Below, piece by piece: positions 3,952 to 62,272 of a DNA stretch of 64,000 nt; positions within the stretch are counted from its first letter, which is position 1, and every line of letters starts with the position of its first letter. The DNA is taken from IMG/VR virus record IMGVR_UViG_3300029983_000007, positions 266,209 to 330,208 of that record; one strand, written 5' to 3'. Position numbers and translations under genes: made by a program. The notes beneath the pieces were generated by a model. It did not search any database. It was not told where the DNA came from and saw only the letters and a list, made by a program, of their open reading frames with translations.

Positions 3952-4167
3952 TTATTCACTTATTTCGTTTAACTGTTTTAACTTTTTTTTTCTTATTTCT
4001 TTTTCAGTATAAAAATAATTATTTATATTTGATATGAATATTTCTTCAAAATCATAAAAATAATATTCATTAATAAATATAAATCCGTTATTATTCTCAT
4101 TTTTGCCATAATACATTTTTCCTACTATAAAATTATCATTGTATGCTTTTTTACATAAATATTTCAT
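3952..4167 (-). CDS. RKxKL-tail small protein, MKYLCKK paralog
   Basis: MKYLCKKAY ... IRKKKLKQLN. Confidence 0.75.
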   Translation of the reverse strand: MKYLCKKAYNDNFIVGKMYYGKNENNNGFIFINEYYFYDFEEIFISNINNYFYTEKEIRKKKLKQLNEISE

Positions 4168-4414
4168 TTAATTTTTTCAATTTAAGTTTTCTGTTTTCTC
4201 CAATATTAATAAAATAATCTTTTAATTTTGGTTCTAAATTTCCAGACACAACAAATTTGGTATTACAAACAAAAATATATTCATATGCTAAATATTTATT
4301 TTTCAATCTAATATTGCTTAGATTATATTTATTAAGATGAATAATATTATCACTATGATAATATTCTCCTGATTTAATATAACTAGAATAAGTTTTTATA
4401 CATTTTAATCTCAT
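4151..4414 (-). CDS. RKxKL-tail small protein, paralog
   Basis: MRLKCIKTY ... NRKLKLKKLN. Confidence 0.75.
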   Translation of the reverse strand: MRLKCIKTYSSYIKSGEYYHSDNIIHLNKYNLSNIRLKNKYLAYEYIFVCNTKFVVSGNLEPKLKDYFINIGENRKLKLKKLNEIFM

Positions 4415-4421
4415 ATGTAAT

Positions 4422-4646
4422 CTACTGTAATTTTTTCAATTTTATTTTTCGTATTTCTTTTTCAGTATAAAAATAATCTTTTAATTTTGGTTCTGCAATT
4501 CCATCAATTACAAATTTATATCCTTTTAGATTAATATATTTAAAAAAAGAACCTGATAATAAATAATCAGAATGAATAATATCATCACAACTGCAATAAT
4601 TTCCAACATTAATGTTTCTATATGTTTTTTTACATAAATATCTCAT
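4422..4646 (-). CDS. RKxKL-tail small protein, paralog
   Basis: MRYLCKKTY ... IRKIKLKKLQ. Confidence 0.75.
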   Translation of the reverse strand: MRYLCKKTYRNINVGNYCSCDDIIHSDYLLSGSFFKYINLKGYKFVIDGIAEPKLKDYFYTEKEIRKIKLKKLQ

Positions 4647-4681
4647 ATAATAATTTTAAGTAAAAACAAAGATACAATAAA

Positions 4682-4906
4682 TTATTTAATATTACACAAT
4701 ATTTCTAATTTTATTTTTCGTATTTCTTTTTCACTATAAAAATAATCATTTATTTTTGGAGAACAATATAGATTATTATCATCTGTTAAAAAAAGTAAAC
4801 TATTTATTTGAATCATTTTAGAATTAGTTAAAATAACACAATCATAAAATTTTCCAATAATAATATCTTTTGAATATGTTTTTTTGCATAGATATTTCAT
4901 TTGCAC
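4682..4906 (-). CDS. RKxKL-tail small protein, paralog
   Basis: MKYLCKKTY ... IRKIKLEIL. Confidence 0.75.
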   Translation of the reverse strand: MQMKYLCKKTYSKDIIIGKFYDCVILTNSKMIQINSLLFLTDDNNLYCSPKINDYFYSEKEIRKIKLEILCNIK

Positions 4907-5100
4907 TTATTCATTATTGTTAATATTTCATCTTTGTCATTGATAGTATATTTTTTTAAATCATTCATTATATTTAAAGAGAATGAATCTTCAAATAATA
5001 CTACATCACTTTTAAAATATTTAAAAAAATTCAAATAATCACCTGAATTTGATATATTTTTAAGTGAATCTTTTGATATAAATCTTTTGTTGAATCCCAT
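4897..5100 (-). CDS. Hypothetical protein
   Basis: 67-aa ORF starting MGFNKRFIS, coupled to next gene. Confidence 0.65.
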   Translation of the reverse strand: MGFNKRFISKDSLKNISNSGDYLNFFKYFKSDVVLFEDSFSLNIMNDLKKYTINDKDEILTIMNKCK

Positions 5101-5195
5101 AATTTTTTATTTTTAATTTATATGATTATTAATTTGGTATGTTTTATATTTAAGAATATTTAACCACAAAATAATGATATTAATTGACATATATT

Positions 5196-5225
5196 TTTGT
5201 ATATCAGATTTTTGTTGTACTTTTG
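5196..5225 (+). promoter_or_regulatory. Bacteroidota-type primary sigma promoter
   Basis: TTTG-N18-TACTTTTG upstream of ORF 5253. Confidence 0.55.
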
Positions 5226-5252
5226 TGTATCATTAATTAAAACACAAACAAC

Positions 5253-6014: not shown

Positions 6015-6015
6015 T

Positions 6016-6819
6016 ATGATCAAAGAAGAATTAATACAGGTATTTGAAGATACTAAACTACACAGTGAAGGTATATTGAAATCTGAAACAACATATCATT
6101 CATTTGATGACAGATTAATGTCAGATGTTAGTATTCCTTGTAGTCAAAACATACAGGTTATTAATTCTGATAGTGTATCTGCTATTACAGAATATAGCAA
6201 ATTAGGGAAAACTTGTGTTCTTAATATGGCATCATTTAAACGTCCAGGTGGTGGAGTTGCAAAAGGCTCAAAAGCACAAGAAGAATGCTTATTTAGGTGC
6301 TCAAATTTGACTCATCTTATTAATACTGATAACTATCCATTAGGAGATGATAAAGCTTTATATACAAAGGATGCAGTATTTTTTAAGGATGTATATTATA
6401 ACTATATGGATGAGGTTAAATCTGATGTCATAACAATTGCAGCACTAAATCTTAAAAATATTGAGGTTAATAGTAATTTTGATACAATATCGAAAGATAA
6501 CATATCATCAATAAATTCTGATGGAGCAAAAATATCAAGGCATGATTATGAAGAATTAACAAAGGAAAAAATAAGATTAATGTTATCACTTGCAATTAAA
6601 AATGATGTTGATATTATTGTATTAGGTTCATTCGGTTGTGGTGTTTTCCAAAATGTTCCTGAAACAATGGCTAAAATGTTTAAAAAATTATTAGTAAATG
6701 AAGGATATTCTAAATATTTTGAGAAAGTAATATTTGCAATCATCAATGATAAAAACTCAGTTGGTAATAATTATGAGATTTTCAAAAATGTTTTTAGTGA
6801 TTATAATTTAATATATTAA
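6016..6819 (+). CDS. Bacterial-type poly(ADP-ribose) glycohydrolase (TIGR02452/DUF2263 macrodomain)
   Basis: VLNMAS-x3-PGGG-x6-AQEE catalytic motif, LGSFGCGVF. Confidence 0.85.
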   Translation: MIKEELIQVFEDTKLHSEGILKSETTYHSFDDRLMSDVSIPCSQNIQVINSDSVSAITEYSKLGKTCVLNMASFKRPGGGVAKGSKAQEECLFRCSNLTHLINTDNYPLGDDKALYTKDAVFFKDVYYNYMDEVKSDVITIAALNLKNIEVNSNFDTISKDNISSINSDGAKISRHDYEELTKEKIRLMLSLAIKNDVDIIVLGSFGCGVFQNVPETMAKMFKKLLVNEGYSKYFEKVIFAIINDKNSVGNNYEIFKNVFSDYNLIY

Positions 6820-6821
6820 AA

Positions 6822-7574
6822 ATGAAAAATAAGTTAAACATATTACAAACAAGAAAATTGAGTGATATTGTAAGCAATTTATATAAAGATGGTGAATTAG
6901 AAAAAATTCTACCTGAATTATGTAAATTACATACTACTACTAATGGTCATAAAAATAATTTTTATCATACATTAGGAGTACTTAACAACGTGATTGAATA
7001 TGATAATGATAACTTAAAAATGAAGATTGTCGCTTTATTACACGACATTGGAAAGATTTCTGTTAGAACAAAAAACAATGAAGGAAATTGGACATTTCAT
7101 GATCATGAAAATGTAGGTGCAAAAATGATACATAAAATTTTAAAAAGATTCAATATAACTAATAAGAAAACTGTTGATTATATTTACAGAATGGTAAAGT
7201 ATCATGGTAGGGTAAAGATGCACAGGGATGTAACAGAATCAGCTATAAGAAGGTTAGATGTAGAAGTTGGACATGATATAGTATTAGAGTTAATAGAGTT
7301 CTGTAAGTGTGACATAACAACTAAATATGATGATAAGCGTCAACGTATTGTTTCAGGATTAGATGAAATAAAGAATAGAATATTAGAGGTTCGTGAGAAA
7401 GACAAAGAATCTAAATGGCGTTCTCCAATCACAGGTATTATAATAATGAAAATGTTAGAAATTACTACTGGTAGAATGGTTGGAGACATAAAGAAAGTAA
7501 CTGATGAAAAAATAAAATCAGGTGAATGGACTGAAGAAGATGCTATTAAATATATTAATACATTTAGAAAATAA
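6822..7574 (+). CDS. HD-domain protein resembling the C-terminal half of a CCA-adding enzyme
   Basis: ILPEL, FYHTLGVL, ALLHDIGK, FHDHENVGA, C-terminal SPITGIIIM...GRMVG tail. Confidence 0.75.
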   Translation: MKNKLNILQTRKLSDIVSNLYKDGELEKILPELCKLHTTTNGHKNNFYHTLGVLNNVIEYDNDNLKMKIVALLHDIGKISVRTKNNEGNWTFHDHENVGAKMIHKILKRFNITNKKTVDYIYRMVKYHGRVKMHRDVTESAIRRLDVEVGHDIVLELIEFCKCDITTKYDDKRQRIVSGLDEIKNRILEVREKDKESKWRSPITGIIIMKMLEITTGRMVGDIKKVTDEKIKSGEWTEEDAIKYINTFRK

Positions 7575-8838: not shown

Positions 8839-8843
8839 GATTA

Positions 8844-9586: not shown

Positions 9587-9913
9587 CTATTCTTCTATTA
9601 TATTACCTAATTTATCTAACTTAGTCTTTCTTACATACTGAACACATTCATCATAATATTTTTTACAATCTCTATTATAAAAAGTTTCTACATTCTGCCG
9701 TCCTTTCTCATTTGCTTCTTTAACAACATCTTTTAAGCATTCTTCACAACAGTATGACCACAATGTACTCATTCTAGTATCATCACCAAGAAAAACTGAA
9801 AATTCTTGTTTATGAGTTTTGCAGTTGTTACATAATATTGAACTTGTTCCTGAATATCCTACTATAACATGACTAAATAGTTTATAATATTCATTTTTAT
9901 CTGGTTTTTTCAT
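9587..9913 (-). CDS. RKxKL-tail protein with Cys motifs
   Basis: Start at MKKPDK; CNNC, CCEEC; ends VRKTKLDKL. Confidence 0.7.
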   Translation of the reverse strand: MKKPDKNEYYKLFSHVIVGYSGTSSILCNNCKTHKQEFSVFLGDDTRMSTLWSYCCEECLKDVVKEANEKGRQNVETFYNRDCKKYYDECVQYVRKTKLDKLGNIIEE

Positions 9914-9914: not shown

Positions 9915-10331
9915 TTATAATATAAATCCAAATTTGATACCAATTCCTGTGCTATTAGTATAAAATACACTAGTAATCAATGTATTTTCATAAATATATC
10001 CTATCTCTGCTCCTCCACTAAATAATTGTTTATTACTTACTAATTTAATATCATTTTGAGGTGTTGCACACATACCAGCTAACCCCATAATATAAAAATT
10101 AGAATCAAAAACATAACCTATTCCATAATTAAAATAATCTGGTAGTCTATCATCAACTGGTAATGATATGCTTAAACATTGATAAATTGATTTTTCAGAA
10201 ATATATCCAAAATCTACACCAACTGATTTGCTAGAGTATGATAATTTTGTGATTAACTTAGTCTGATCATTTTGTGAAAACATTGAAATTGATATAAATA
10301 ACAATACAATGATTAATTTAAAGTTTTTCAT
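9915..10331 (-). CDS. Putative secreted/outer-membrane beta-rich protein
   Basis: Signal-peptide-like N-terminus, alternating beta pattern, aromatic-rich C-terminal strand. Confidence 0.6.
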   Translation of the reverse strand: MKNFKLIIVLLFISISMFSQNDQTKLITKLSYSSKSVGVDFGYISEKSIYQCLSISLPVDDRLPDYFNYGIGYVFDSNFYIMGLAGMCATPQNDIKLVSNKQLFSGGAEIGYIYENTLITSVFYTNSTGIGIKFGFIL

Positions 10332-10624
10332 AATTTATTTAATTTATTTAATTTTTTCCTTCTCAAAAATTGCTCAATTTTCATATCAAGAAGTTGTTTA
10401 CTAACAAAATAACTACCTCTTCCTGCGGTATAATCACACTGATCAAGCCATAATTCAAATGATATTCCGTCATCTTCAATATTTTCATGAATAATACTAG
10501 AATATTTTCCAAATTGACCAGATTTATTTAAAATTTCAGTAGCCAATTCTAAATATTGTTCTGTAATAGAATCAGCTTTAATTATTAATTTTGATCTTTT
10601 TTCAAATGTTTCGTCGTAGTTCAT
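10328..10624 (-). CDS. RKxKL-tail small protein
   Basis: Ends LRRKKLNKLNKL. Confidence 0.7.
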   Translation of the reverse strand: MNYDETFEKRSKLIIKADSITEQYLELATEILNKSGQFGKYSSIIHENIEDDGISFELWLDQCDYTAGRGSYFVSKQLLDMKIEQFLRRKKLNKLNKL

Positions 10625-10956: not shown

Positions 10957-11060
10957 AATATTTATATTATTAGAGATTATTAGAATGCAAAGATACTAAA
11001 TATAATTCGAATAAAAAAATATTATTTGTTTTTTTAAATTTTATTTTTAATGATTATATT

Positions 11061-11069
11061 TAATATATA
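11061..11069 (+). promoter_or_regulatory. TAATATATA putative late promoter
   Basis: Immediately upstream of MKYLKTFE start at 11077. Confidence 0.55.
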
Positions 11070-11076
11070 TAGTCAT

Positions 11077-11427
11077 ATGAAATACTTAAAAACATTTGAA
11101 TCATTATTATATAGTGATTATAAGGCTGGAGATTACGTACTACTTGATTTAATTAAAATAAAATCTAATAACAAAGATAATGATTATGAAATGGATGAAG
11201 TTGATGAATATGGCAATTCTATACCAATTGATGAATTTGCATTAATAAAGGATAAGACTGTTGAATTAAATAATGGACTTTATTTATATAGTGTAACTTT
11301 TTATAATTATAATAATGAAAAAAATGATTCTTATGGTGTTGAGTCAGATGAAATAATAAGAAAGCTAAATACAAATGAGATAGAAGAGTTCAACAGAAAA
11401 AAAGAAGCATTGAAATACAACATATGA
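11077..11427 (+). CDS. Dual-tag small protein, GDYV subfamily
   Basis: Likely start MKYLKTFE at 11077; AGDYVL; ends LKYNI. Confidence 0.8.
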   Translation: MKYLKTFESLLYSDYKAGDYVLLDLIKIKSNNKDNDYEMDEVDEYGNSIPIDEFALIKDKTVELNNGLYLYSVTFYNYNNEKNDSYGVESDEIIRKLNTNEIEEFNRKKEALKYNI

Positions 11428-11858
11428 AATATTTAAAAAAATTTGAAAATAGATTAACTAACGTATTTAAATCTAAAGATGTAGATATGTGGGATGAATA
11501 TATAGAAACTGAGTTAGAAACCGAATATGGATATAATAAACTCATTGGGGCTGTACATGCTGGAAATCTTAAAAGATTTGAATATTTATTACCAATATAT
11601 AAAAATAAAATAAATAATATTTATGATGGAAAGAATGTATTAATTGAGGTTATAATACGAGATATTGATTTATATGAAAAAAAGAAAATGATTGAATTAT
11701 TATTGGATAATGGAGTTAATTATAAGCTCGAGTTTGGAGGTGATACATTTTATGATTTGATTACTAATGATAAATTAAAAAAATGGTTTGACGATAAATA
11801 TCCAGATATAGTAAAAGAGCTTAATTTATATAAAAATACAAATAAATATAATTTATGA
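11424..11858 (+). CDS. Dual-tag protein with ankyrin-like repeats
   Basis: MKYLKKFE; LIGAVHAG, IELLLDNGVN; TNKYNL. Confidence 0.75.
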   Translation: MKYLKKFENRLTNVFKSKDVDMWDEYIETELETEYGYNKLIGAVHAGNLKRFEYLLPIYKNKINNIYDGKNVLIEVIIRDIDLYEKKKMIELLLDNGVNYKLEFGGDTFYDLITNDKLKKWFDDKYPDIVKELNLYKNTNKYNL

Positions 11859-12169
11859 AATATATAAAAACATTTGAAAAATTAGATAGAAAAATAAAAA
11901 AAGGAGATTATGCTATAATCGATTTTAAAACAACTAATCCTGGAGTTACAGAATTTTTTCAAAATAATATTAGTAAAATTATCGAAGTAAGAGGAATATG
12001 GATTAAATTTGGTTATAAATATGTACCAGAAGAAATCAAGGAATATTTTTATAAATCTAGAGTATATTATATATATCAAATAGAGTTAAACTTAGAAGAT
12101 GTTTACTCTTATGCTATCTCAAAAGAAAAATTAGAATTAGAATTATCAACAAAAAAATTCAACATATGA
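11855..12169 (+). CDS. Dual-tag small protein, GDY subfamily
   Basis: MKYIKTFE, KGDYA, TKKFNI. Confidence 0.8.
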   Translation: MKYIKTFEKLDRKIKKGDYAIIDFKTTNPGVTEFFQNNISKIIEVRGIWIKFGYKYVPEEIKEYFYKSRVYYIYQIELNLEDVYSYAISKEKLELELSTKKFNI

Positions 12170-12744
12170 AATATATAAAAACATTTGAATTATCAACTTT
12201 TTATGATGAAAAAGATATATTTTGGTATATCCATAATATTAATTTACCTAAAATTAAAGAATTAGTATCTGAAATACCTAATATTAATCTTAATATTAAA
12301 GATAGTACTGGTGAAACACCTTTGCTTCAGTCAGTTAGGTTTAGTTTATATAACGTGTTTAAATTTTTGATAGAATCAGGAGCAGATGTAAATTGTACAT
12401 GTACTAATGGAGTCACTCCATTGATGATAGCAGCAAGAAATAAAAAAGAAGAATTTGTTCAAGATTTAATAGATGCTCACGCAGATTTGAATATTAAAAA
12501 TGATGACGGCGAAACTGCATTAATTATGATTTCTAGCTACACAGATAAAAAGGCTTTTAAAATAATTGAAAACTTAATTGAAAGTGGTGCAGATTGGAAT
12601 ATATCTGATAATTATAATAATACTTTTTTGATGCATTTACAACCTGCATATATGAAAAAAATAATAGAAAAATATCCAGATAAATATGAAGAATTTATTA
12701 AAGAATATAATTTTAAAAATGATATAAAAAAATTCAATTTATGA
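12166..12744 (+). CDS. Dual-tag ankyrin-repeat protein
   Basis: GETPLL, GVTPLMIAA, GETALIM, LIESGAD repeats; IKKFNL. Confidence 0.9.
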   Translation: MKYIKTFELSTFYDEKDIFWYIHNINLPKIKELVSEIPNINLNIKDSTGETPLLQSVRFSLYNVFKFLIESGADVNCTCTNGVTPLMIAARNKKEEFVQDLIDAHADLNIKNDDGETALIMISSYTDKKAFKIIENLIESGADWNISDNYNNTFLMHLQPAYMKKIIEKYPDKYEEFIKEYNFKNDIKKFNL

Positions 12745-13142
12745 AATATATAAAAAAATTTGAAAGTGAAATATCAGATGATGAGAAAGCTATTTTGGAT
12801 AGTCAAAAAGCGGAAGATAATTATCTTAGACAAAGATATAAAGATATGAAGAAATATTTATTTTTTAAAGATAGAACGGGTAATATAGATAATGGAACAT
12901 ATTTTATATTAGAAAAAGATAGAATGGAAGCAGTATATGATCACACTAACCTTTTTATTGTGACTAACAAATTATATACATATAATTTGAACACAGATAA
13001 ATTGAAAAATGAAAAAAGAAAAGATAAGCATTACAATTTAAATAAATATAAACTTGGTTATATAATGACAGATTCAGATAATTTACAGGATTTATTAGAT
13101 TATATACCTGCTCTAAAACACACAAATAAATTTAATCTATGA
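12741..13142 (+). CDS. Dual-tag protein
   Basis: MKYIKKFE ... TNKFNL. Confidence 0.8.
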   Translation: MKYIKKFESEISDDEKAILDSQKAEDNYLRQRYKDMKKYLFFKDRTGNIDNGTYFILEKDRMEAVYDHTNLFIVTNKLYTYNLNTDKLKNEKRKDKHYNLNKYKLGYIMTDSDNLQDLLDYIPALKHTNKFNL

Positions 13143-13612
13143 AACACATTAAAACGTTTGAAAATGCATTCACTGACATATTTAAAAAAAGGAAGAAATT
13201 ACCTCACGAAGTTATTAATTTTGGTGATGTATTAACTAAATTTATAGAGAAAAATATTGATATGGAATGGGATGTTTATTCAAATACATATGAAAGTAGT
13301 AATAAAAAATATTATGATGTTGTAAGAATTTTTATTGACCCACATGATATAGATGATGCTGCTGAAGTTTTGGAATTGCATTATAATTATGATAGAAATT
13401 CTATTTTATATTGTTACCATCCAATAATGAATTTTATGGAAGATATTAAAGACTATTTAGGAAATATTGTAAAGAATAGTTCTATTGAAGATGTTTCATC
13501 TGCTGGAGATAATAGATATTGGATACCACTAGATAAATTACCTGAAATAATAAATAAAATAAATAGCTCTGATTTTGATTATTATAAGTCGACAAAAAAA
13601 TTTAACATATGA
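13139..13612 (+). CDS. Dual-tag protein
   Basis: MKHIKTFE ... TKKFNI. Confidence 0.8.
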   Translation: MKHIKTFENAFTDIFKKRKKLPHEVINFGDVLTKFIEKNIDMEWDVYSNTYESSNKKYYDVVRIFIDPHDIDDAAEVLELHYNYDRNSILYCYHPIMNFMEDIKDYLGNIVKNSSIEDVSSAGDNRYWIPLDKLPEIINKINSSDFDYYKSTKKFNI

Positions 13613-13986
13613 AATATATAAAAAAATTTGAACGTAAAAAGAATGAATTTTATACAATTAAAAATGAATTAATTAATGCTGTATATCATGGTAATTATTC
13701 TAAAACTAAAAAATTATTAGATTCTGGCTTTGATGTTAATAGTAATATAGATGGAAGAAATTCTGCATTATTATATGCTTCTTATAAAGGAGAATGGAAT
13801 ATTTTATTTCTAATATTAAAATATAATCCTGATTGGTACATAAAAGATATTTCAAAATATGATTTTATTGACTATATAAATGATCATATAGATGGAGATA
13901 AAGTAATAGAAAAAATAACAAAAAAATATCCTGTTAAATACAATGAGTATTTAATGATAAAAAAATCAGAAAAATTTAATTTATAA
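13609..13986 (+). CDS. Dual-tag ankyrin-repeat protein
   Basis: LINAVYHG, LLDSGFDVN, GRNSALLYA; SEKFNL. Confidence 0.85.
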   Translation: MKYIKKFERKKNEFYTIKNELINAVYHGNYSKTKKLLDSGFDVNSNIDGRNSALLYASYKGEWNILFLILKYNPDWYIKDISKYDFIDYINDHIDGDKVIEKITKKYPVKYNEYLMIKKSEKFNL

Positions 13987-13988
13987 AT

Positions 13989-14294
13989 ATGAAAGTAGAA
14001 AAATTTAATGAGCATAATTTTACAACATTTGATGATGATATTGTATATGCAGGTAAATCTAAATACCCAGTAGGCACCAAAATTAAATTTAAAGATGATG
14101 GTGAGTATTTAACTGGTACTTTGACACATCCATTTGGTTATGGTGATGTTGGTGTATTCTTAGATGAAAAAGGTAAATATAAATATGATAGGGTATCACT
14201 AAAAAACAATGAATATACAGTAATTGATGATGATGTTGATAAATTCATTAAAGATCACAATTTCAAAAAAGATATAAAAAAATTCAATTTATAA
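13989..14294 (+). CDS. Dual-tag protein (variant N-terminus MKVEKFNE)
   Basis: Ends IKKFNL. Confidence 0.8.
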   Translation: MKVEKFNEHNFTTFDDDIVYAGKSKYPVGTKIKFKDDGEYLTGTLTHPFGYGDVGVFLDEKGKYKYDRVSLKNNEYTVIDDDVDKFIKDHNFKKDIKKFNL

Positions 14295-14387: not shown

Positions 14388-14519
14388 TTGCTTGAGAATA
14401 CAGCATTATAGAGAAGAACTTTAGAAACTATTATTTTTTTCTCACTAACATTTGAATTAGTATTCTTCTAATACAATCTAAGAAATAATTAAACTTCTTT
14501 TGTTGTTAGATAGTTCGGT
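14388..14519 (-). ncRNA. Degenerate stand-alone copy of the 3' module of the large ncRNA
   Basis: Shares TAACAACAAAAG and AATAATA..TT.TAA..TTCTTCT.TATAA....ATT.CTCA blocks with 14725-14870; both abut a terminator. Confidence 0.5.
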
Positions 14520-14724: not shown

Positions 14725-15735
14725 AGGCTGAGAAATATACCTTATACAGAAGAATCTTAAAAAGTTATTATTGTTTCTACTTTCTTTCCACTAATATTGG
14801 TTTCCCTAACATTAGTAATTCTCAATGACAGTCAATTAGATTAACTAATCCTTTTGTTGTTAATTACTCTCTCAGTACTTATTACCTATCTAGGTTGCCA
14901 CCCAAACTCAATCTTGCTACAGATTTAAGGAATTTTTCTGAAAATCATGTCAAACTTGGGGTTCTTCACGGCTACGACGATTTTCATCTCATAACTAGTA
15001 GTCACCTTTCATCAACAACAGTCGAACACTTTTCCTTTATTTGTTTTATTTTAATTGTGCATTAAATTTGCAATTTAAAGTTTGTTTTGTGGATAATGAA
15101 AGTAGTGGTTCGACAACCAGCGTCTCCATCTTTTGAACGGAAATATACTAAACTACTCTCTGAGATATCCCTATCTCCATATTTTAAGTCAACTAAGATA
15201 CTCTCATAGCACTTGGTAATGCTAAGGTAACCTTAATAACAGCACCACCTGTACATTGTATTACAATCTAATATTACCTTTCGGTTTTAAGCTAACTCTC
15301 ATAATGGACAACGCAATTATACAACTGGAAATCGTATTTCTTGCAATAATCCTTCAGGTTATTCTTATTGATGTTCCCATCTCACTTAGACTACCCACAT
15401 AGCCTTTGCATTAAACCACTTTCTCTACAGTGTTACCCTCGATAATTAAGGTTTAATGATATCCTGATTGTCTGCTCAAACACTAAATAATGTATTAATA
15501 ACAAATTAACTAACTATTAACTATTCATATTAATGAGTATGTGAAGAATCTTACCGAAGCAAAATCAATTACACACAAAAAAATGTGTCAAATTAATAAT
15601 TGTTGTATCTGTTGATTAATAAATAATTTAATGTCGCAAATATATAGAAACAACTACATATTCACTTTATCCTACTTTCGTAGTTTATTTAATGACTACA
15701 GACAGCCAAATATTTTCAATTTTTACAAAGAACGC
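14725..15735 (-). ncRNA. ~1-kb ornate structured ncRNA, ROOL/GOLLD-like (family unverified)
   Basis: ORF-free and GC-richer; minus-strand GNRA hairpins CTAC-GAAA-GTAG (15672-15683), ACC-GAAA-GGT (15276-15285), GAGATA-GGGA-TATCTC (15162-15177); many other stems; terminator at 3' end. Confidence 0.65.
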
Positions 15736-16039: not shown

Positions 16040-16565
16040 ACATTTGCAACATTTACTTCTGTAATATTAATCGTACACTTTTGCAAGCTTCAAGTTGGCT
16101 TTTGCCTTTGATTATTTTTATTACTTTTTCAATTTCATTAATATCTAAGTGTGTTTAGTTGCACTATCTCCTTTTGCAAGCTTCAAGGTGGTTTCTGTAC
16201 CATTAGATTTTTCATTGCTTTTACTATCTAAGTGTGTTTAATTGCACTATCTCCTTTTGCAAGCTTCAAGGTGGTTTCTATACCATTAGATTTTCAGTTT
16301 CATTTACAATTTAGTTTATTTCTACATGTGTTCATTTATAGTTATACACCTATTGCAAGCTTCAAGGTGATTTCTGTATCAACATTTTTCATTGTATTTG
16401 AAATATATAAGTGTGTTCATTTGCACTATCTCCTTTTGCAAGCTTCAAGGTGGTTTCTATACCATTATATTTCTCATTGTATAAGCAAGATAATTAATAT
16501 GTAAGTGTGTTCATTTGCACTATCTCCTTTTGCAAGCTTCAAGGTGGTATTTTATACCATTACAT
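16040..16565 (-). repeat. Tandem array of six ~66-nt pseudoknot/three-way-junction RNA units
   Basis: Units at ~16040-16097 (degenerate), 16143-16208, 16226-16291, 16322-16385 (degenerate), 16405-16470, 16499-16565; compensatory changes in three stems. Confidence 0.9.
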
Positions 16566-16612
16566 TTTTCATTGCTTCAATCTGAAATTTGATTTGTTTC
16601 ATTATTGTAGTT

Positions 16613-17826: not shown

Positions 17827-17865
17827 TTTTTTCAATCTGAAATTTGATTTGTTTTTATTGTAGTT

Positions 17866-18125
17866 CAAAATTACAAAAAGTTTTTTGTTTTACCAAATAT
17901 TTAATGTTAAAGTTTTGAACTTTTTTTCAATTGAAATTTAATTTTTGTGATTATATTTCTTTTGATATTGTAGTGCAAAATTACAAAAAGTTTTTTGTTT
18001 TACCAAATATTTAATGTTAAAGTTTTGAACTTTTTCAAGTACTCTTACTTGAAGTTTTTTGTTTTTTATTGTAGTACAAAATTAATAAAAGTTTTTGATA
18101 CTACCAAATATTTAATGTTAAAGTT
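17866..18125 (-). promoter_or_regulatory. Three stacked near-identical Bacteroidota-type promoters
   Basis: TAATTTTG elements at 17866, 17976, 18077 within a repeated ~60-nt block. Confidence 0.7.
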
Positions 18126-18131
18126 TCAGTT

Positions 18132-18470
18132 TTAATATACGCATTCATATCCATCTGAATTCTCAAGTGTTTCAATAATTTCCAATAAAAAATCATTAAA
18201 GTTTTTACTTGTATAATCTTTTGAAAAGAAATAATGATATTTTTCTAAAATCTCATCTCCTCTATTATAAAACAATTTTAATTTTGTTGCAGTATCTAAT
18301 GCATCATCTTTTGACATTTCATGAGCCATATCTGCATAGTGCTCATTTTGACAATATTCATTATCTTGAAATTTCGCACCAATTTCTCTACATAAAGTTT
18401 CAATTAGATGTTCTCTATTTATGCTTGTTATAAACTTAATACCACTTTTTGTAATAATAGTTTTACTCAT
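18132..18470 (-). CDS. Hypothetical protein
   Basis: 112-aa ORF behind promoter at 18496-18527. Confidence 0.7.
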   Translation of the reverse strand: MSKTIITKSGIKFITSINREHLIETLCREIGAKFQDNEYCQNEHYADMAHEMSKDDALDTATKLKLFYNRGDEILEKYHYFFSKDYTSKNFNDFLLEIIETLENSDGYECVY

Positions 18471-42744: not shown

Positions 42745-43916
42745 TTAATTAAAGCTAAAGTTAAAAAATAAAAAATTTAAAATATCATCACATTTCCTTA
42801 TAGAATTAATGAACTCTAATCTATTTTGATATAATGCTTCTAAACCAATTGAAATACCATCAAACTCTTCTAATTTATACTTAGTCCTTGGTACATTAAA
42901 ATAATCATAACCACCAAAAATTTTATGAGTTATCATAGATATATTAGCAAGACAAAAGTGTGTTCTCAAATCAGGTTGTAAGTAAGTATTGTTAATCTCA
43001 CTCACTTCCTTTAATGCATATTCTATAAGCTTCCTTTCAACAATATTACGAACAATACCATTAAACTCTATTTGGTGAGTATCAATTGTTAATTCTTCTT
43101 CTGGTGGATAAACTGCTACTGACATAATTATAGTGTTTTTTAATTGTTTGACTTAATTGAATACAAAGATACCACATATAATTAATATATGTGGTATCTT
43201 AAAAGTTAAATAATATTATTAATAACTAATATGTATTAAAACGCTATTTCTTACTATGGCTTTTTTAAGAATATCTATAAATTCTGCATGTTCTTCATCA
43301 GTCCAATGCTTATTTTCTTTCATTAAACTTTTTATGTTTATAATATCGCTCTCTTTCATATTTACAATACAATCATTGAGTTCATTATTTTTATAGAAAG
43401 ATTCTTTATCATCTTTTATAATTCCATACTCTCCAATCAAATAAGATAGAAGAACCCAATTATTTCTAAGATAGTAAATCTCTGTTACTAATTTCTCAAA
43501 GTCTTCAAATATGATTGAATCTTTTTTTTGTTCATCACTATATTCTACATCTTCATATATAACTGGAGTAACTTCCTTATATGAATCCTTTGTTTTATAA
43601 AATGTTATATCAAGTCCCATAATTATGTTGTTTTTTCTTTGTGTCTAATCATCAATCCAGTACCACTTGGAGAATTTAAGCAATAATATATTTCCAGATT
43701 ATGAGTAACTAAATATCTAATTAATCCATTATATTCTTCTGCTGATACTTCTTTTGATTTTTGTGCTCTCAATTCTGTACCATCAATAAATCCTTTTGAA
43801 TACCCTAACTTTCTACCATTCTCAAATGATTCAGTATCATTTTTGTATTTTAAAAGAGTAATTTTAATTCTCATCTCGCATATCATATTAAAGATATAAT
43901 CAAAAAATTTTTTCAT
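42745..43916 (-). other. Three hypothetical CDS (42745-43125, 43219-43620, 43623-43916)
   Basis: Co-oriented ORFs with host-type TATCTTTG element at 43164; 43219 starts MGLD, common among phage hypotheticals. Confidence 0.65.
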
Positions 43917-44139
43917 TTGATATTTTATTTAATTTACGTTTTCTATATTCTGATAATGTTATAAATTCATGATATTCAGTTATAAAAACAACATCTTTAA
44001 ATTCAAGAAATTCAAAAGCAGTTTCATTATTACCAATACAAATAATATGTAATGGTTTAAAAAGTGGAAAATCATTATTCATAACTTTATTATTAGTACA
44101 AATTACTATATCACCTATTTTCATAATCCTATTGTCCAA
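43900..44139 (-). CDS. RKxKL-tail small protein
   Basis: IGDIVIC ... FITLSEYRKRKLNKI. Confidence 0.7.
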   Translation of the reverse strand: MDNRIMKIGDIVICTNNKVMNNDFPLFKPLHIICIGNNETAFEFLEFKDVVFITEYHEFITLSEYRKRKLNKISNEKIF

Positions 44140-52951: not shown

Positions 52952-53181
52952 ACTATTTTTTTGATATTATTTAATTTTTTTTTTCTATATTCAGTATTAG
53001 TTATAAAACAATCCTCTGAATATGTAAACTCTGGATGTTCCTCAATATAAATATCATATCTTGTAAATCCTACTATATGATAATCTTTTAGAGTATAAAC
53101 TCTATCTACATACAATCTTGGTTTAGGATCATATGCACCTCTTTTATTCAATATACAAACAATCTTATCACCTGGTTTCAT
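52948..53181 (-). CDS. RKxKL-tail small protein
   Basis: MKPGDKIVC ... FITNTEYRKKKLNNI. Confidence 0.7.
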   Translation of the reverse strand: MKPGDKIVCILNKRGAYDPKPRLYVDRVYTLKDYHIVGFTRYDIYIEEHPEFTYSEDCFITNTEYRKKKLNNIKKIV

Positions 53182-54483: not shown

Positions 54484-54577
54484 AGGAAGAATGACTGGAT
54501 TCGAACCAGTAATAATTTATAATTTTTTACAAATGCTTTTTTGGCTACTAGTTTACCGATTAACTTACATTCTTCTA
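54484..54577 (-). tRNA. tRNA-like gene with collapsed anticodon arm (possibly Leu-derived)
   Basis: Acceptor AAGAATG/CATTCTT, D stem AGTT/AACT, T arm ACTGG-TTCGAAT-CCAGT; anticodon region GCCAAAAAAGC barely pairs; extra 8-bp arm. Confidence 0.6.
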
Positions 54578-54705: not shown

Positions 54706-54805
54706 TAGTTAAGGCGGGACTCGAACCCGCATGAGAAATTAATCTCTGAGATACCTCATTAATAGGATTTTAATCCTAAACGTCTAACCATTTCGTCACC
54801 TAACT
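54706..54805 (-). tRNA. tRNA-Leu(TAA)-like gene with 6-nt anticodon loop and 32-nt variable arm
   Basis: Acceptor AGTTAGG/CTTAACT, D arm ACGAAATGGTTAGACGT, TAGGA-TTAAAA-TCCTA, GCGGG-TTCGAGT-CCCGC. Confidence 0.75.
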
Positions 54806-55318: not shown

Positions 55319-55530
55319 AATTTATTAATTTTATCAAGTTTTTCTTTTCTTAATTCTTTTTTATCATAATATAAAAATGTGTATATTAATTCGTTATTAT
55401 CATTAAATGATTGTTTAAATTCTTTAATTTCAATATCATTATTGTAATTTAACCATTTGGTTATATCAGATTCAAAATCTCTCAAATCATATGAATCTCT
55501 CACATGGTTTTTAAATATTTTAATTTTCAT
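55315..55530 (-). CDS. RKxKL-tail small protein
   Basis: Ends LRKEKLDKINKL. Confidence 0.7.
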   Translation of the reverse strand: MKIKIFKNHVRDSYDLRDFESDITKWLNYNNDIEIKEFKQSFNDNNELIYTFLYYDKKELRKEKLDKINKL

Positions 55531-58533: not shown

Positions 58534-58535
58534 GT

Positions 58536-58805
58536 TTATTTGTTATTTTCATTAATTTCATCTAATTTTTCTTTTCTTAAATTCATTGGATCAATAGTAA
58601 GCAATTTATCTAATTCTGATAGAACTTTATTTACTTCTTCAGATGAATCAAAATCAATAATCAATTCACAGATACCATCTTTAGATTTCCTTTCAACTAT
58701 AATATTCCAAAAATTTAATCTATCGCAAGGATAATATGCAAATATGCTATTTAAATTTAATCTATAAATACCAATTTTAATACACTTTTTTATTTTACAT
58801 TTCAT
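58536..58805 (-). CDS. RKxKL-tail small protein
   Basis: Ends LRKEKLDEIN; paralog of 58795. Confidence 0.7.
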   Translation of the reverse strand: MKCKIKKCIKIGIYRLNLNSIFAYYPCDRLNFWNIIVERKSKDGICELIIDFDSSEEVNKVLSELDKLLTIDPMNLRKEKLDEINENNK

Positions 58806-59055
58806 CTTTATTTAACTCAATAAGTTTCTCTTTTCTTTTGTAGTTATTAATATTTAAAACAAACAAAGAATCTAATTCATCTATTGTTATTTTCAAATCT
58901 AATTCGTTTTCAAAAGATATATCAAATTCGTCTATATTATCCAGTAACAGACGTTCAATAACAAGATTTTTATTATTATAAGTATAGTAGCCAAATATAC
59001 TATCAATTTTTATTCTTCTACCTCCAATTATTATTTTATCTTTATCTATTACCAT
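58795..59055 (-). CDS. RKxKL-tail small protein
   Basis: Ends KRKEKLIELN. Confidence 0.7.
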   Translation of the reverse strand: MVIDKDKIIIGGRRIKIDSIFGYYTYNNKNLVIERLLLDNIDEFDISFENELDLKITIDELDSLFVLNINNYKRKEKLIELNKDEM

Positions 59056-59387: not shown

Positions 59388-60109
59388 TTACAATTCATGG
59401 TTTTGTTCCAACTTTTTATTACAACATCTCTCAATGTATCAAGAGTAAAATCATCATATACTAATTCCTCAGAATTTTGTCTCATTTCTAATCCACAAGT
59501 GTTACATTTAACATAAGCATAACCACAATTATTTAATCCTGTATGACTACAATTAACTTCAGCATTACCTCCACAAACACATTTACTAACACCACTTTCA
59601 GAAAATGATGGATTCCACCTATCTATTAATTTCTTATAAAAGAATAATAATTCATAATCACCAATATTAACAAAGTCTAAATCACTAGCATCTTTACAAA
59701 TATTTCCATATGAAAAATCTTTAAATTCATCACCTGTAAAATTATTAGTTTCTTCTCTAATATTTTCTATCTCTCTTAGTATAAAAGTTCTATTCATCTA
59801 TTTTTATTTTTAATTATAATTTGGATAGATTATTGATTCAAATTTATCAGTTAATCTTTCTTTAATATTATCAATAGCTTCTTCTAGCGTAATAACATTA
59901 ATACCAATACTTGAAATATGAGTTTTAAAATGTTCATCATATTGTTCATCAGACATTTTTTTAAAAAAATTGCATGATTTGCGATTTTTAATATAATATT
60001 CTTCAATCTTTATATCATAAAGTTTAGTTGCTTCATCTTTATCTGAAAAAACTTCAATTATTTCAGATACGCATAAATCATATACTACCCAAGTGTCAAT
60101 TAATTTCAT
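59384..60109 (-). other. Two hypothetical CDS (59384-59797 with CVCG...CNTC Zn ribbon; 59810-60109)
   Basis: Co-oriented ORFs. Confidence 0.6.
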
Positions 60110-60116
60110 AACATTT

Positions 60117-61223
60117 TTATTTTAGCCAATAATTAGTTTTATTTGTTCCTTTTACATTCATCATTTGTAAGAATTCTTTTGGAAATTCTGTACCCCATGC
60201 AAATCCAACATCACAATGAGTATCTTCAGAAAAATCTGTTATTATATTTGATGTAGAAAAAATTAGAGGATCTTCCCTTCTTGCTAATGCTTGCTGAACT
60301 TCAAGCTTCAATGTTTTAATTTGTTCTGCTTGCTGTATAGCCATTTGCTGTTGACGAATTTGTTCTTTTGATATTTTTTCAAGTTCAGATTGTATTCTAC
60401 CAATATTTTGTTCGATTCCTTTTACTTGTTCTTTGAGTATCTTTGTTGAATTTTCAAGTGCATCTACTCTATTACCAAGATTTACCATTGTTTCATACAT
60501 ACTTCTAAATAATGGTAAATTCATACCAACATTCATACTAACCATTGATAATGAATTTGGAAAATATACATCGTAATATTTTTGACTCTTTACGTGTTTT
60601 TCAAAATCATAAAAACCAATAGGACATAATATATAAAAGTTTCTTTCTGAGTTAGCATTTTTGTAGTTATTAATAGCAGACTCAATATCTTTTGATGCCC
60701 TTTTTGGGTCACAAGTCAGAATGGAATTTTTTGCTAATTCTAATGGAATAATCATAAATCCAAAAGTCTCTGCAATTTGAACAATAGAACTAAGATTCGA
60801 ATTTAATCTTGAGTTAAGGTACTGATTGTAATTTTTGTCTATTTGAATTTCAACTTGATCATATCTGTCGCCTGAAGAAGTTCTTTCTTTTTTTATCAAG
60901 TTGTATTTTATTAAGTTTTCAGGAATCTTAACATTATATGATTTCAAACTGCCTAATATATTATTATATTCAGTAACTTTTTCGTTGATTGAATATCCTA
61001 ACTGTTTAAAAATTTCCCTTTTAGTAGAAAAATTAGTTTTGGTTTCATCATAATAGGAATTAGATCTAATAATATTGGCTTTTTCTAACACTTTTAATGT
61101 TAACATAAATTCTTTTAAATCAGAGTCTATTAATTTTAGCTTATCAATTAATAATTGACTCTTTTCAGTGCTTTTTGCTGCACCTGATACATTTTTTGTT
61201 GGAGTGACATTTAATAAATTCAT
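60117..61223 (-). CDS. Coiled-coil-containing hypothetical protein, 368 aa
   Basis: Gln/Glu-rich heptads in C-terminal third. Confidence 0.75.
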   Translation of the reverse strand: MNLLNVTPTKNVSGAAKSTEKSQLLIDKLKLIDSDLKEFMLTLKVLEKANIIRSNSYYDETKTNFSTKREIFKQLGYSINEKVTEYNNILGSLKSYNVKIPENLIKYNLIKKERTSSGDRYDQVEIQIDKNYNQYLNSRLNSNLSSIVQIAETFGFMIIPLELAKNSILTCDPKRASKDIESAINNYKNANSERNFYILCPIGFYDFEKHVKSQKYYDVYFPNSLSMVSMNVGMNLPLFRSMYETMVNLGNRVDALENSTKILKEQVKGIEQNIGRIQSELEKISKEQIRQQQMAIQQAEQIKTLKLEVQQALARREDPLIFSTSNIITDFSEDTHCDVGFAWGTEFPKEFLQMMNVKGTNKTNYWLK

Positions 61224-61313
61224 AATAATAATTTTTAATTACACAAAAATTGAAATAATTTTTAATTTCAAACACAAAGATAATAAAAAAAATCAATTAC
61301 ACAAATTAATTGT

Positions 61314-61754
61314 TCATATATTATTCAATTTATTTAGTTTTTTCTTTCTTAAATATAAATTATAATTACCATTATGATTTAACATATTAATATAATCTTT
61401 TAATGTCAATTCAGATAACTCAGAAATATATTTATTTAGTTTTACTTTATAATCTCTAAGACTAACTAAAAAATCTTTATCAAAAAAATAAAACATCAAT
61501 AATATTAAATCAAAAAAATCAGAAATTTCTTCATTTTTTATTCGTAGTAAGTCATCTTTTAATTTTAATGACAAATCATATAAAGAAATAAATTTATAAT
61601 CATTTTTTTGATATTCAATTATAGTATTTAATAATTGATAAAAAATACGGGAATATCTTTCATCAATAGCCTGAATATCTACTAAAAAAAGAAATCTATT
61701 ACGATATAACATATCATTATATTTCTTAGTATCAAGTTTTTTGATTTCAATCAT
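61314..61754 (-). CDS. RKxKL-tail protein
   Basis: Ends LRKKKLNKLNNI. Confidence 0.7.
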   Translation of the reverse strand: MIEIKKLDTKKYNDMLYRNRFLFLVDIQAIDERYSRIFYQLLNTIIEYQKNDYKFISLYDLSLKLKDDLLRIKNEEISDFFDLILLMFYFFDKDFLVSLRDYKVKLNKYISELSELTLKDYINMLNHNGNYNLYLRKKKLNKLNNI

Positions 61755-61962
61755 TAATTTTTTTTGATAATTGTATTAACTTCTCTTTTCTAATTTCTAT
61801 CTTCGCTTTTGAATAATATTCTAAATAGTTATCGTGTTCTAACAGGAAATCAAAAAATGTATGATTTACACCACGATAAGGTGTATCTTCATCTTGACCA
61901 CAATATAAATCATATGCTTTATGATCTAATTCAGTAATAATATAATCATTATAATTAATCAT
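61747..61962 (-). CDS. RKxKL-tail small protein
   Basis: Ends IRKEKLIQLS. Confidence 0.7.
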   Translation of the reverse strand: MINYNDYIITELDHKAYDLYCGQDEDTPYRGVNHTFFDFLLEHDNYLEYYSKAKIEIRKEKLIQLSKKIND

Positions 61963-62272
61963 TTGATTCTGTTATTTTATTTAACTTATCTATTCTTAAT
62001 TTAGTTTTTAAATTAAATGCAACAGCATGAGCATACTTTGAGTGACAATCATCTATTGATTTCATAATATAAATATATTCATCATAATCTTCTTCATTGG
62101 TTATTTCAAATTCTTCATTTAGTTTAATTTTTTCAAAATAACGTAATTCTGATTCAAAATAATTTATTTCTGATAGTATATTTTTTTCATTTATCATAAT
62201 TTTATATTTTACCTTGAACAAAAAACTCAAGTATAAATACAAGTTTAGACTCAAATTCTTTATCTTCTTCAA
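61955..62272 (-). CDS. RKxKL-like tail small protein
   Basis: Ends LRIDKLNKI; real start likely internal. Confidence 0.6.
   Translation of the reverse strand: MKKIKNLSLNLYLYLSFLFKVKYKIMINEKNILSEINYFESELRYFEKIKLNEEFEITNEEDYDEYIYIMKSIDDCHSKYAHAVAFNLKTKLRIDKLNKITESND

What the first reader, a model, noticed from the sequence alone, without database searches (positions are those of the whole stretch)
3952..62272. Second, mutually exclusive C-terminal tag R-K-x-K-L-x-x-L/I on ~17 small minus-strand genes
Seen at the ends of ORFs 3952, 4151, 4422, 4682, 9587, 10328, 39333, 43900, 44300, 52948, 55315, 58536, 58795, 61314, 61747 and 61955, and a short ORF near 46880 (e.g. IRKKKLKQL, LRKEKLDKI, YRKRKLNKI). 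It never co-occurs with the KFNL tag, and the bodies are largely unrelated. Inference: a basic amphipathic helix that docks early proteins on one shared partner or surface (membrane, nucleoid, ribosome, RNA polymerase or a phage compartment).
Basis: partly seen in the sequence, partly recalled or inferred. Interest (0 to 1): 0.65.

Follow-up and report, generated by a model that had tools for sequence, protein, structure and literature searches.

The report
Shared C-terminal helix tag, megaphage proteins
About one in eight proteins of a roughly 700-kb peat-bog phage, with unrelated folds, end in the same short basic helix (K-x-h-R-K-x-K-L-x-K-L-N); it is a real, undescribed protein-level tag that most likely lets them all dock on one common partner, which is still unknown.

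Summary
All 17 ORFs carry the motif. In the whole 330-kb record, 74 of about 600 ORFs carry R-[KR]-x-K-[LIV]-x-x-[LI] within 16 residues of the C-terminus, against 0.2-0.5 expected from shuffles. Selection acts on the protein, not the DNA: synonymous codons follow genome usage, the DNA word is almost only in sense frame 0, and 14 tagged genes have no downstream gene. AlphaFold puts the tag in a confident C-terminal helix on two unrelated folds, one SH3-like and all-beta, one all-alpha. It also follows a complete DUF6794 domain and a PHROG-2164 domain. The largest tagged family has 2,955 cluster representatives in metagenomes, none named. Related phage contigs have arrays in which 50-80% of genes are tagged. 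An unrelated myovirus contig carries a variant, R-K-x-K-I-x-N-L-L. Cellular genomes show no such C-terminal bias. The tag never co-occurs with KFN[LI]-COOH, and the two tags sit in separate gene blocks. It is hydrophilic and only weakly amphipathic, and position 0 is specifically Arg. That argues for a specific docking peptide rather than a membrane anchor. The partner and the 'early' timing remain untested.

The parts
3952..4167 (-). 71-aa ORF of the SH3-like 'LCKK...YFYTEKEI' family; tag RKKKLKQL encoded at 3970-3993, tail 5 aa
4151..4414 (-). 87-aa ORF of the SH3-like family; tag RKLKLKKL at 4169-4192, tail 5 aa
4422..4646 (-). 74-aa ORF of the SH3-like family (the one folded); tag RKIKLKKL at 4428-4451, tail 1 aa. 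The tag lies in helix 62-73, pLDDT about 91
4682..4906 (-). 74-aa ORF of the SH3-like family; tag RKIKLEIL at 4697-4720, tail 4 aa
9587..9970 (-). 127-aa ORF with another body; tag RKTKLDKL at 9608-9631, tail 6 aa. It overlaps ORF 9915-10331 by 56 nt, so its start is uncertain
10328..10624 (-). 98-aa ORF with another body; tag RRKKLNKL at 10340-10363, tail 3 aa
39333..39668 (-). 111-aa ORF; tag RKRKLEKL at 39345-39368, tail 3 aa. No same-strand gene follows it
43900..44139 (-). 79-aa ORF with the N-terminal KIGDIVIC motif of the SH3-like family; tag RKRKLNKI at 43921-43944, tail 6 aa
44300..44620 (-). 106-aa ORF; variant tag RRKKVKNL at 44315-44338, tail 4 aa
46874..46972 (-). 32-aa ORF, possibly a remnant; tag RKKKLEQL at 46889-46912, tail 4 aa
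52948..53181 (-). 77-aa ORF with the N-terminal KPGDKIVC motif of the SH3-like family; tag RKKKLNNI at 52963-52986, tail 4 aa
55315..55530 (-). 71-aa ORF with another body; tag RKEKLDKI at 55327-55350, tail 3 aa
58536..58805 (-). 89-aa ORF, paralogue of 58795-59055; tag RKEKLDEI at 58554-58577, tail 5 aa
58795..59055 (-). 86-aa ORF; tag RKEKLIEL at 58813-58836, tail 5 aa
61314..61754 (-). 146-aa ORF with another body; tag RKKKLNKL at 61326-61349, tail 3 aa
61747..61962 (-). 71-aa ORF of the all-alpha 'ELDxLAYxLY...YYxKA' family (the one folded); tag RKEKLIQL at 61768-61791, tail 6 aa. The tag lies inside helix 43-70, pLDDT 92-96
61955..62272 (-). 105-aa ORF; degenerate tag RIDKLNKI at 61973-61996, tail 5 aa

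Best explanation
The motif is a modular C-terminal alpha-helical recognition peptide of about 14 residues (K-x-[IL]-R-K-x-K-L-x-K-[LI]-N-x-[IL]). It is kept by selection on the protein and appended to many structurally unrelated small phage proteins. The most likely mechanism is as follows. The helix shows one conserved face: Leu+4 and Leu/Ile+7, flanked by Arg0, Lys+1, Lys+3 and Asn+8. This face inserts into the same acidic or hydrophobic groove of a single macromolecular partner. Dozens of different 'bodies' are thereby brought to one place. Shown here: the motif, its statistics, protein-level selection, helicity, modularity, its spread in a group of AT-rich phages, and its segregation from the KFN[LI] tag. 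Inferred: that it binds anything, and what it binds. I favour a specific protein site, host-encoded or common to tailed phages, because a variant of the tag occurs in an otherwise unrelated myovirus contig.
For: Enrichment of 74 against 0.2-0.5 expected, nearly all within 1-8 aa of the C-terminus. Protein-level selection: Arg codons are AGA 64, AGG 4, CGT 4, CGA 3, and Leu at +4 is TTA in 66% against 61% genome-wide, with CTN codons present. The x positions vary freely, and L/I/V exchange. The DNA word AGAAAANNNAAATTA lies in sense frame 0 in 29 of 34 cases. Helicity on two folds: an SH3-like beta body plus helix 62-73, and an all-alpha body with the tag inside helix 43-70. Modularity: the tag follows a complete DUF6794 domain (residues 6-88, tag at 118) and a PHROG-2164 domain (29-129, tag at 146). 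In 212 non-SH3 tagged proteins, positions -14 to -5 carry no information, while K-3, K+6 and N+8 stay conserved. Specificity: Arg0/Lys3 occurs 96 times against 32 for Lys0/Lys3 at C-termini, although Lys is four times commoner than Arg. Conservation: 2,955 clusters at 50% identity match the SH3-like family, the best 150 nearly all over their full length including the tag (152 of 159 proteins held have it). A second family also always carries the tag. Arrays in related contigs have 25 of 39, 22 of 42 and about 35 of 44 ORFs tagged. Contig G005 carries a variant tag and shares only one weakly similar protein with this phage. Negative control: 55 exact DNA matches in 596 Gb of cellular genomes sit at arbitrary places, not at C-termini.
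Against: No partner was found and there is no experimental data. One complex prediction between two differently folded tagged proteins gave no verdict. The helix is short. In tandem arrays, the residues just after the tag overlap the next gene's start in another frame. Part of the end conservation (N-E-S-R) is therefore a coding constraint of the neighbour. A complete 640-kb phage that gave one exact match is not enriched for the tag (12 matches against 9 for the control), so the feature is lineage-restricted. The 'early' timing is unknown.
Confidence: 0.5

Rival explanations
1. Virion cargo-loading signal. The basic C-terminal helix binds the inside of the procapsid or the scaffold. The tagged proteins are then packaged and ejected into the host with the DNA. 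This would work like encapsulin cargo-loading peptides, the T4 capsid-targeting sequence, or the basic C-terminal helix-turn-helix of the P22 scaffolding protein. It is a special case of docking.
For: A short terminal peptide sits on many unrelated small proteins. The helix is basic. A capsid for a genome of about 711 kb is very large. A variant tag in an unrelated myovirus contig fits a partner common to tailed phages. What is known of encapsulins, T4 and P22 comes from my own knowledge, not from a test here.
Against: Tagged genes lie in arrays of small genes away from the block of large, partly tail-fibre-like genes. The bins at 110-140 kb hold no tagged gene. There is no sequence likeness to known loading peptides, no virion proteome, and no cleavage motif.
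Confidence: 0.12
2. No common partner. The helix is a generic structural cap of small domains, spread by tandem duplication and recombination in gene arrays. It is kept partly because the 3' end of each gene is also the A-rich translation-initiation region and, in another frame, the start of the next gene. On this reading it is a junction module.
For: About 60% of tagged genes have the next start within about 14 nt of the tag. In related arrays the tail N-E-S-R overlaps M-K-V-G-D of the next gene. The phage uses A-rich, G-poor regions upstream of starts, without Shine-Dalgarno motifs. About a third of tagged ORFs are one family.
Against: 14 of 75 tagged genes have no same-strand downstream gene. 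The distance from the tag to its own stop is tighter (sd 8.6 nt) than to the next start (sd 20 nt). Synonymous codons are used as in the rest of the genome. Shuffling the last 30 residues gives 0.46 matches against 74 observed. The tag is kept on two different folds and after complete foreign domains. It stays intact when internal in fused proteins. Arg0 is residue-specific.
Confidence: 0.15
3. Polyanion binding. The basic helix binds nucleic acid (phage DNA, an RNA hairpin as with arginine-rich motifs, or rRNA) or polyphosphate, and concentrates the proteins there.
For: Net charge is +3.3. Several tagged bodies look like zinc ribbons placed just before the tag. The SH3-like body gives weak, sub-threshold hits to the phage ProQ-C-like Tudor domain (E 0.008-0.02). 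The phage encodes a PPK2.
Against: There is only one Arg, and the other basic positions are Lys. Strict residue identities (R0, K3, L4) point to a shaped pocket rather than to charge alone. No repeated hairpin target was sought or found.
Confidence: 0.13
4. Degradation or remodelling tag. This would be a C-terminal degron read by ClpX, Lon or a phage protease, timing the removal of these proteins (compare the basic C-terminal MuA-type ClpX signal).
For: It is C-terminal, basic and shared by many small proteins. The comparison with the MuA signal comes from my own knowledge.
Against: It is not at the extreme C-terminus: the tail is 1-16 aa and variable. It is internal in natural fusions. It lies in a confidently folded helix.
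Confidence: 0.05
5. Membrane-targeting amphipathic helix of the MinD/FtsA type.
For: It is a C-terminal helix with basic residues and Leu/Ile three to four residues apart.
Against: Mean hydrophobic moment is 0.19 and mean hydrophobicity is -0.44, below untagged C-termini. Only two or three aliphatic residues are present, and no aromatic ones.
Confidence: 0.03
6. DNA- or RNA-level signal (promoter, terminator, ribosome-binding region), or a by-product of A-rich composition.
For: The genome has 24% G+C and A-rich gene ends.
Against: See: conservation has codon periodicity, synonymous sites are free, the word is specific to frame 0, shuffles fail to reproduce it, and it is present without a downstream gene.
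Confidence: 0.02

Closest known systems
Encapsulin cargo-loading peptides, the T4 capsid-targeting sequence, and the C-terminal basic helix-turn-helix of the P22 scaffolding protein
   Same: A short terminal peptide on otherwise unrelated proteins that brings them to one binding site. The P22 element is also a basic C-terminal helix.
   Different: There is no sequence similarity. The T4 signal is N-terminal and cleaved. Packaging is not shown here, and the tagged genes are not next to the large-gene block that holds the tail-fibre-like genes.
Effector families with a constant delivery motif and variable bodies (C-terminal positively charged signals of type IV secretion; RxLR and PEXEL motifs of eukaryotic pathogens)
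   Same: One short conserved motif sits on very many fast-evolving small proteins with unrelated bodies, encoded in expanded arrays.
   Different: Those motifs are unstructured or N-terminal, and they act in secretion. Here the motif is a folded helix in a phage, and no translocation machinery is implicated.
C-terminal clamp-binding tails of T4 proteins and beta-clamp-binding motifs
   Same: Many different proteins share a short C-terminal peptide that docks on one hub.
   Different: Those consensus sequences are hydrophobic or acidic (QL[SD]LF-like), not R-K-x-K-L. No clamp was examined here.
MinD/FtsA membrane-targeting sequences
   Same: A C-terminal helix with basic residues.
   Different: Hydrophobic moment and hydrophobicity are too low.
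Arginine-rich-motif RNA-binding helices (lambda and P22 N proteins)
   Same: A short basic helix, with local likeness R-R-x-K-L.
   Different: Those are N-terminal and rich in Arg. Here there is a single invariant Arg, the other basic positions are Lys, and no RNA target is known.
Small SH3/Tudor-like phage proteins (Pfam PF24203 Phage_ProQ_C_like, PF27001 Phage_T4_Y07B)
   Same: The body of the largest tagged family is a small beta domain of this general shape.
   Different: Hits are below the curated thresholds (E 0.008-0.02; TM 0.46). Those families are not defined by the R-K-x-K-L helix.

Membership tests
Terminal cargo-loading / capsid-targeting peptides | A short conserved terminal peptide on structurally unrelated proteins | tested here: met
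   Two folds by AlphaFold, plus the DUF6794 and PHROG-2164 bodies. No conservation upstream of the tag in 212 other bodies.
Terminal cargo-loading / capsid-targeting peptides | The tagged proteins are present inside the shell or virion | not testable with these tools
   No proteome exists for this uncultured phage.
Terminal cargo-loading / capsid-targeting peptides | Genes linked to the shell or structural genes | tested here: not met
   No tagged ORF lies in the 110-140 kb block of large, partly tail-fibre-like genes. The tags lie in arrays of small genes.
Membrane-targeting amphipathic helix (MinD/FtsA type) | High hydrophobic moment with a broad apolar face | tested here: not met
   Mean moment 0.19 and mean hydrophobicity -0.44, both below untagged C-termini.
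C-terminal degron (ClpX C-motif type) | The motif is at the extreme C-terminus, with a free carboxylate | tested here: not met
   A variable tail of 1-16 aa follows the tag. The tag is internal in fusion proteins.
Arginine-rich-motif RNA-binding helix | Several Arg residues in a short helix that binds a defined hairpin | tested here: inconclusive
   The helix is confirmed, but only one Arg is conserved. No hairpin target was searched for.
Nucleotide-level signal (promoter / initiation region) | Conservation independent of reading frame and of amino-acid meaning | tested here: not met
   29 of 34 DNA words lie in frame 0. Synonymous codons occur at genome frequencies. 14 tagged genes have no downstream gene.
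Pfam PF24203 Phage_ProQ_C_like (body of the largest family) | Score above the curated gathering threshold (27 bits) | tested here: not met
   15.8-17.2 bits for two metagenomic members, and nothing for the window's members.
Curated protein families in general (Pfam, PHROGs) | Any model that covers the tag | tested here: not met
   No hit at E<=1 covers the tag in 10 + 10 tagged proteins. tblastn against 50,697 GenBank phage records found nothing relevant.

The most novel reading that the evidence does not exclude
The R-K-x-K-L helix and the KFN[LI]-COOH end are two addresses of a phage-encoded protein-sorting code. Together they mark about 30% of the proteome (74 + 102 of 600 ORFs). They never occur on the same protein, and they lie in separate transcription blocks. 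On this reading they send two sets of fast-evolving small effectors to two different destinations, for instance packaged in the giant capsid for ejection as against docked on a host hub.
Probability: 0.15. Interest if true: 0.9.

Novelty: new variant of a known kind. Interest (0 to 1): 0.62.

Why it matters
Most genes of huge phages are small ORFs of unknown function. A short tag shared by more than 10% of a proteome, and by most genes of some arrays, gives a single experimental handle on dozens of them at once. One peptide pull-down could name the hub they act on. The same tag would then serve to predict and classify thousands of metagenomic phage proteins that now have no annotation: 2,955 clusters for one tagged family alone. 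If the partner is a capsid or another compartment, the tag would also be a natural loading signal with uses in engineering. The two mutually exclusive tags hint at sorting or regulatory logic not yet described in phages.

Tried and rejected
Pfam and PHROG scans of 20 tagged proteins found no model that covers the tag.

tblastn of two family members against GenBank phages gave only chance hits to Aeromonas phages (E=2), or nothing.

Foldseek against the PDB gave only weak SH3 rows (E>=2). The ESM Atlas returned only unnamed Uroviricota clusters.

Three literature searches found no description of the motif.

Complex prediction of an SH3-like tagged protein with an all-alpha tagged protein, to test whether tags bind each other, gave no verdict (score 0.15, mark 0.32). 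It is not evidence either way.

I looked for a complementary acidic terminal motif in the proteome and found none.

I tested whether the SH3-like bodies could be the receptor. This is unlikely, because contig G005 has the tag but no such bodies.

I looked for candidate partners shared by the two tag-bearing phages. Only one protein of unknown function is shared, at 26% identity, with no Pfam, PHROG or PDB match.

The complete 640-kb phage that gave one exact match is not enriched for the tag.

No RNA run holds the region, so expression and timing could not be examined and read laying was not used.

Full report
What the window is. The window is the last 64 kb of a 330,208-bp IMG/VR virus record that CheckV rates 46% complete. 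It has 24% G+C. Identical proteins occur on a contig of 711,471 bp. The DNA is held almost only by peat metagenomes (JGI samples). Large proteins at 113-135 kb match tail-fibre and collagen-like PHROGs, so this is a tailed megaphage. Regions upstream of starts lack Shine-Dalgarno motifs. They are G-poor (about 5%) and 57-66% A at -9 to -17. This is the pattern known from Bacteroidota (my own knowledge), but the host was not identified.

The observation. In the whole record, a greedy non-overlapping ORF set of 600 ORFs of at least 40 aa holds 74 matches to R-[KR]-x-K-[LIV]-x-x-[LI] within 16 residues of the C-terminus, and 10 elsewhere. Shuffling each protein gives 0.24 C-terminal matches. Shuffling only the last 30 residues, which keeps the local A-rich, Lys-rich composition, gives 0.46 (maximum 4). 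The 1,304 off-frame ORFs hold 3. The tail after the core is mostly 3-6 residues. Genome-wide the tag is on both strands, so 'minus strand' is a property of this window only.

Protein or DNA? Four tests point to the protein.

- Codons inside the motif follow genome-wide synonymous usage. Arg is AGA 64, AGG 4, CGT 4, CGA 3 (genome: 77% AGA). Leu at +4 is 66% TTA against 61% genome-wide, with CTT, CTA and CTC present. Lys is about 90% AAA against 89%. Leu, Ile and Val exchange, and the x positions are free.
- The DNA word AGAAAANNNAAATTA lies in sense frame 0 in 29 of 34 occurrences.
- Fourteen of 75 tagged genes have no same-strand gene downstream. The distance from the tag to its own stop (sd 8.6 nt) is tighter than to the next start (sd 20 nt).
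- An exact 27-nt version of the word was scanned over 596 Gb of bacterial and archaeal genomes. It gave 55 matches at arbitrary places, not at the C-termini of small ORFs. In IMG/VR the same word gave 67 loci, nearly all in frame at the C-terminus of 60-150-aa ORFs.

Anatomy of the tag. I aligned 272 distinct tagged proteins from this phage and the IMG/VR loci. Positions my search pattern did not fix are conserved: Lys at -3 (42-53%), Ile/Leu/Tyr at -1, Lys at +6 (62-72%), Asn at +8 (37-51%) and Ile/Leu at +10. In the 212 proteins without the SH3-like N-terminal motif, positions -14 to -5 carry almost no information. The common unit is therefore about 14 residues: K-x-h-R-K-x-K-L-x-K-[LI]-N-x-[IL]. 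On a helical wheel (my own reasoning), R0, K1, K3, L4, L7 and N8 fall on one face, and the free positions 2 and 5 on the other. Position 0 is specifically Arg: Arg0/Lys3 occurs 96 times against 32 for Lys0/Lys3 at C-termini, although Lys is four times commoner than Arg. The segment is strongly hydrophilic and only weakly amphipathic. Its mean moment is 0.19 and its mean hydrophobicity -0.44, against 0.24 and -0.06 for untagged C-termini.

The bodies. With the tail removed, BLASTP gives 59 components among 74 bodies. The largest family has about 30 members here, with N-terminal K-[IV]-G-D-K-L-x-C and the tag preceded by Y-F-Y-T-x-x-E. AlphaFold gives this family a small beta domain plus a C-terminal helix at residues 62-73 (mean pLDDT 74, about 91 over the tag). 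Foldseek and the Atlas return only weak SH3-like rows and unnamed phage clusters. A second family (E-L-D-x-L-A-Y-x-L-Y ... Y-Y-x-K-A-x-x-I-I-R-K-E-K-L) is all-alpha, with the tag inside a long terminal helix at residues 43-70 (pLDDT 83 overall, 92-96 over the tag). Elsewhere in the genome the tag follows a complete DUF6794 domain (profile positions 1-82 of 83, residues 6-88, tag at 118). It also follows a PHROG-2164 domain (residues 29-129, tag at 146). The tag is thus a module on unrelated folds.

Spread. A profile of the SH3-like family finds 2,955 cluster representatives (50% identity) at E<=0.001 among 1.84 billion proteins. The best 150 nearly all match over their full length. None has a name or a curated family, and GenBank phages hold no relative. 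Related contigs contain arrays in which 25 of 39, 22 of 42, or about 35 of 44 genes are tagged, on many kinds of body including zinc-ribbon-like ones. In natural fusions the tag is internal and intact, so a free C-terminus is not required. A 37.8-kb myovirus-like contig, G005 (31% G+C, with terminase and tail sheath), carries a variant, R-[KR]-x-K-I-x-N-[LI]-L. About ten of its small ORFs have it, and none has the SH3-like start. G005 shares only one weakly similar protein with this record. A complete 640-kb phage that gave one exact match is not enriched. The tag is therefore typical of a group of AT-rich phages, not of megaphages as such.

Relation to the KFN[LI] tag. 102 ORFs end exactly in K-[FY]-N-[LIV], and none carries the RK tag, where about 12.6 would be expected. 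The two tags lie in different same-strand blocks (32 with RK only, 20 with KFN only, 3 with both). Adjacent RK/KFN pairs number 5 against 25 expected, with a minimum of 11 in 2,000 shuffles. KFN[LI] genes form nearly pure arrays, and half of them start M-K-Y-[IL]. RK genes are scattered among untagged small genes.

How it most likely works. A residue-specific, hydrophilic helix is kept on unrelated folds through thousands of diverged homologues. It is not explained by the neighbouring gene or by composition. It is best read as a docking peptide for one common site (confidence 0.5). The variant in an unrelated phage favours a host factor, or a component common to tailed phages, as the partner. 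The rivals are a virion cargo-loading signal (0.12), a junction module or structural cap without a partner (0.15), polyanion binding (0.13), a degron (0.05), a membrane anchor (0.03) and a nucleotide-level signal (0.02). One caveat is real. In tandem arrays the residues just after the tag (N-E-S-R) are also M-K-V-G-D of the next gene in another frame. Part of the conservation beyond +8 is thus imposed by the neighbour. I tested whether tags bind each other; the result was no verdict. No partner, no timing and no localisation are known.

Novelty. No curated family, no GenBank phage and no paper found in three searches describes the motif. Terminal targeting or docking peptides are a known kind. 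This one is new in sequence, in scale (about 12% of a proteome) and in its pairing with a second, exclusive tag.

Noticed in passing
window 14725-15160 (-), with a partial second match at 14390-14491 (-): A full-length GOLLD RNA (Rfam RF02032, 243 bits against a gathering score of 150). It lies in the 3.8-kb stretch without ORFs between the KFN[LI] array and ORF 18132-18470.
   Followed up: partly
window 16137-16577 and 17847-18126: Tandem repeats of 83/179 nt (2.5-5 copies) and 110 nt (2.7 copies) in the same ORF-free stretch. Their function is unknown; they may belong to further non-coding RNAs.
   Followed up: no
window 54486-54574 (-) and 54706-54805 (-): Two long tRNA-like genes by Rfam (41 bits each). 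ARAGORN calls only the first, as tRNA-Phe with the odd anticodon AAA.
   Followed up: no
window 147-3223, 11050-14294, 22738-26898, 36832-39338 (+), 19990-20983 (-); 102 ORFs genome-wide: The KFN[LI] tag sits exactly at the C-terminus (91 of 107 occurrences). Half of these proteins start M-K-Y-[IL]-K-x-F-E. Asn is AAC in 50% of cases against 14% genome-wide. The last codon is almost always NTA, partly because of ATGA stop/start overlaps.
   Followed up: partly
L048:10904-12443 and L014:1842-2495 (related IMG/VR contigs): Proteins with an internal RK module, followed by another domain and then 3-5 repeats of L-S-D-T-T-K-L-N-V-Y-T-P (or K-D-S-N-K-F-N-V-F-T-P). This is a repeat also visible in the DNA, and it resembles the KFN[LI] end.
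   Followed up: no
L087:6702-7886 (+) (G000 226702-227886) and L154:7917-9341 (-) (contig G005): This is the only protein shared by the two tag-bearing phages (26% identity over 243 aa). Its conserved motifs D-I-x-N-S-Q-P-x-F, A-K-x-L-x-Y-x-x-L-F-G and H-D-S-I recall motifs A, B and C of family-A / T7-like single-subunit polymerases (from memory). It has no Pfam or PDB match; only the G005 copy gave one weak PHROG hit of unknown function.
   Followed up: partly
L155 (ENA contig, 20 kb) and window-wide: In tandem arrays the tail N-E-S-R-(R)-stop of one gene is read in another frame as M-K-V-G-D-K of the next gene. Overlaps of 8-23 nt are common here, besides the usual ATGA overlap (96 of 488 gene pairs).
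   Followed up: partly
window 21090-22733 (+), 6016-6819 (+), 6822-7574 (+), 30663-31601 (-), 39715-40608 (+), 40627-42087 (+): Auxiliary genes: a PPK2 fused to a 'Swiss Army Knife' HAD domain, a microbial-type PARG, an HD hydrolase, a polynucleotide kinase-phosphatase, a radical-SAM protein and a TnpB (OrfB_IS605 plus Cas12f-like TNB).
   Followed up: no
whole record G000, upstream of 545 starts: There is no Shine-Dalgarno signal. G is about 5% and A 57-66% at -9 to -17. This pattern is typical of Bacteroidota-type initiation and is the only clue to the host.
   Followed up: partly
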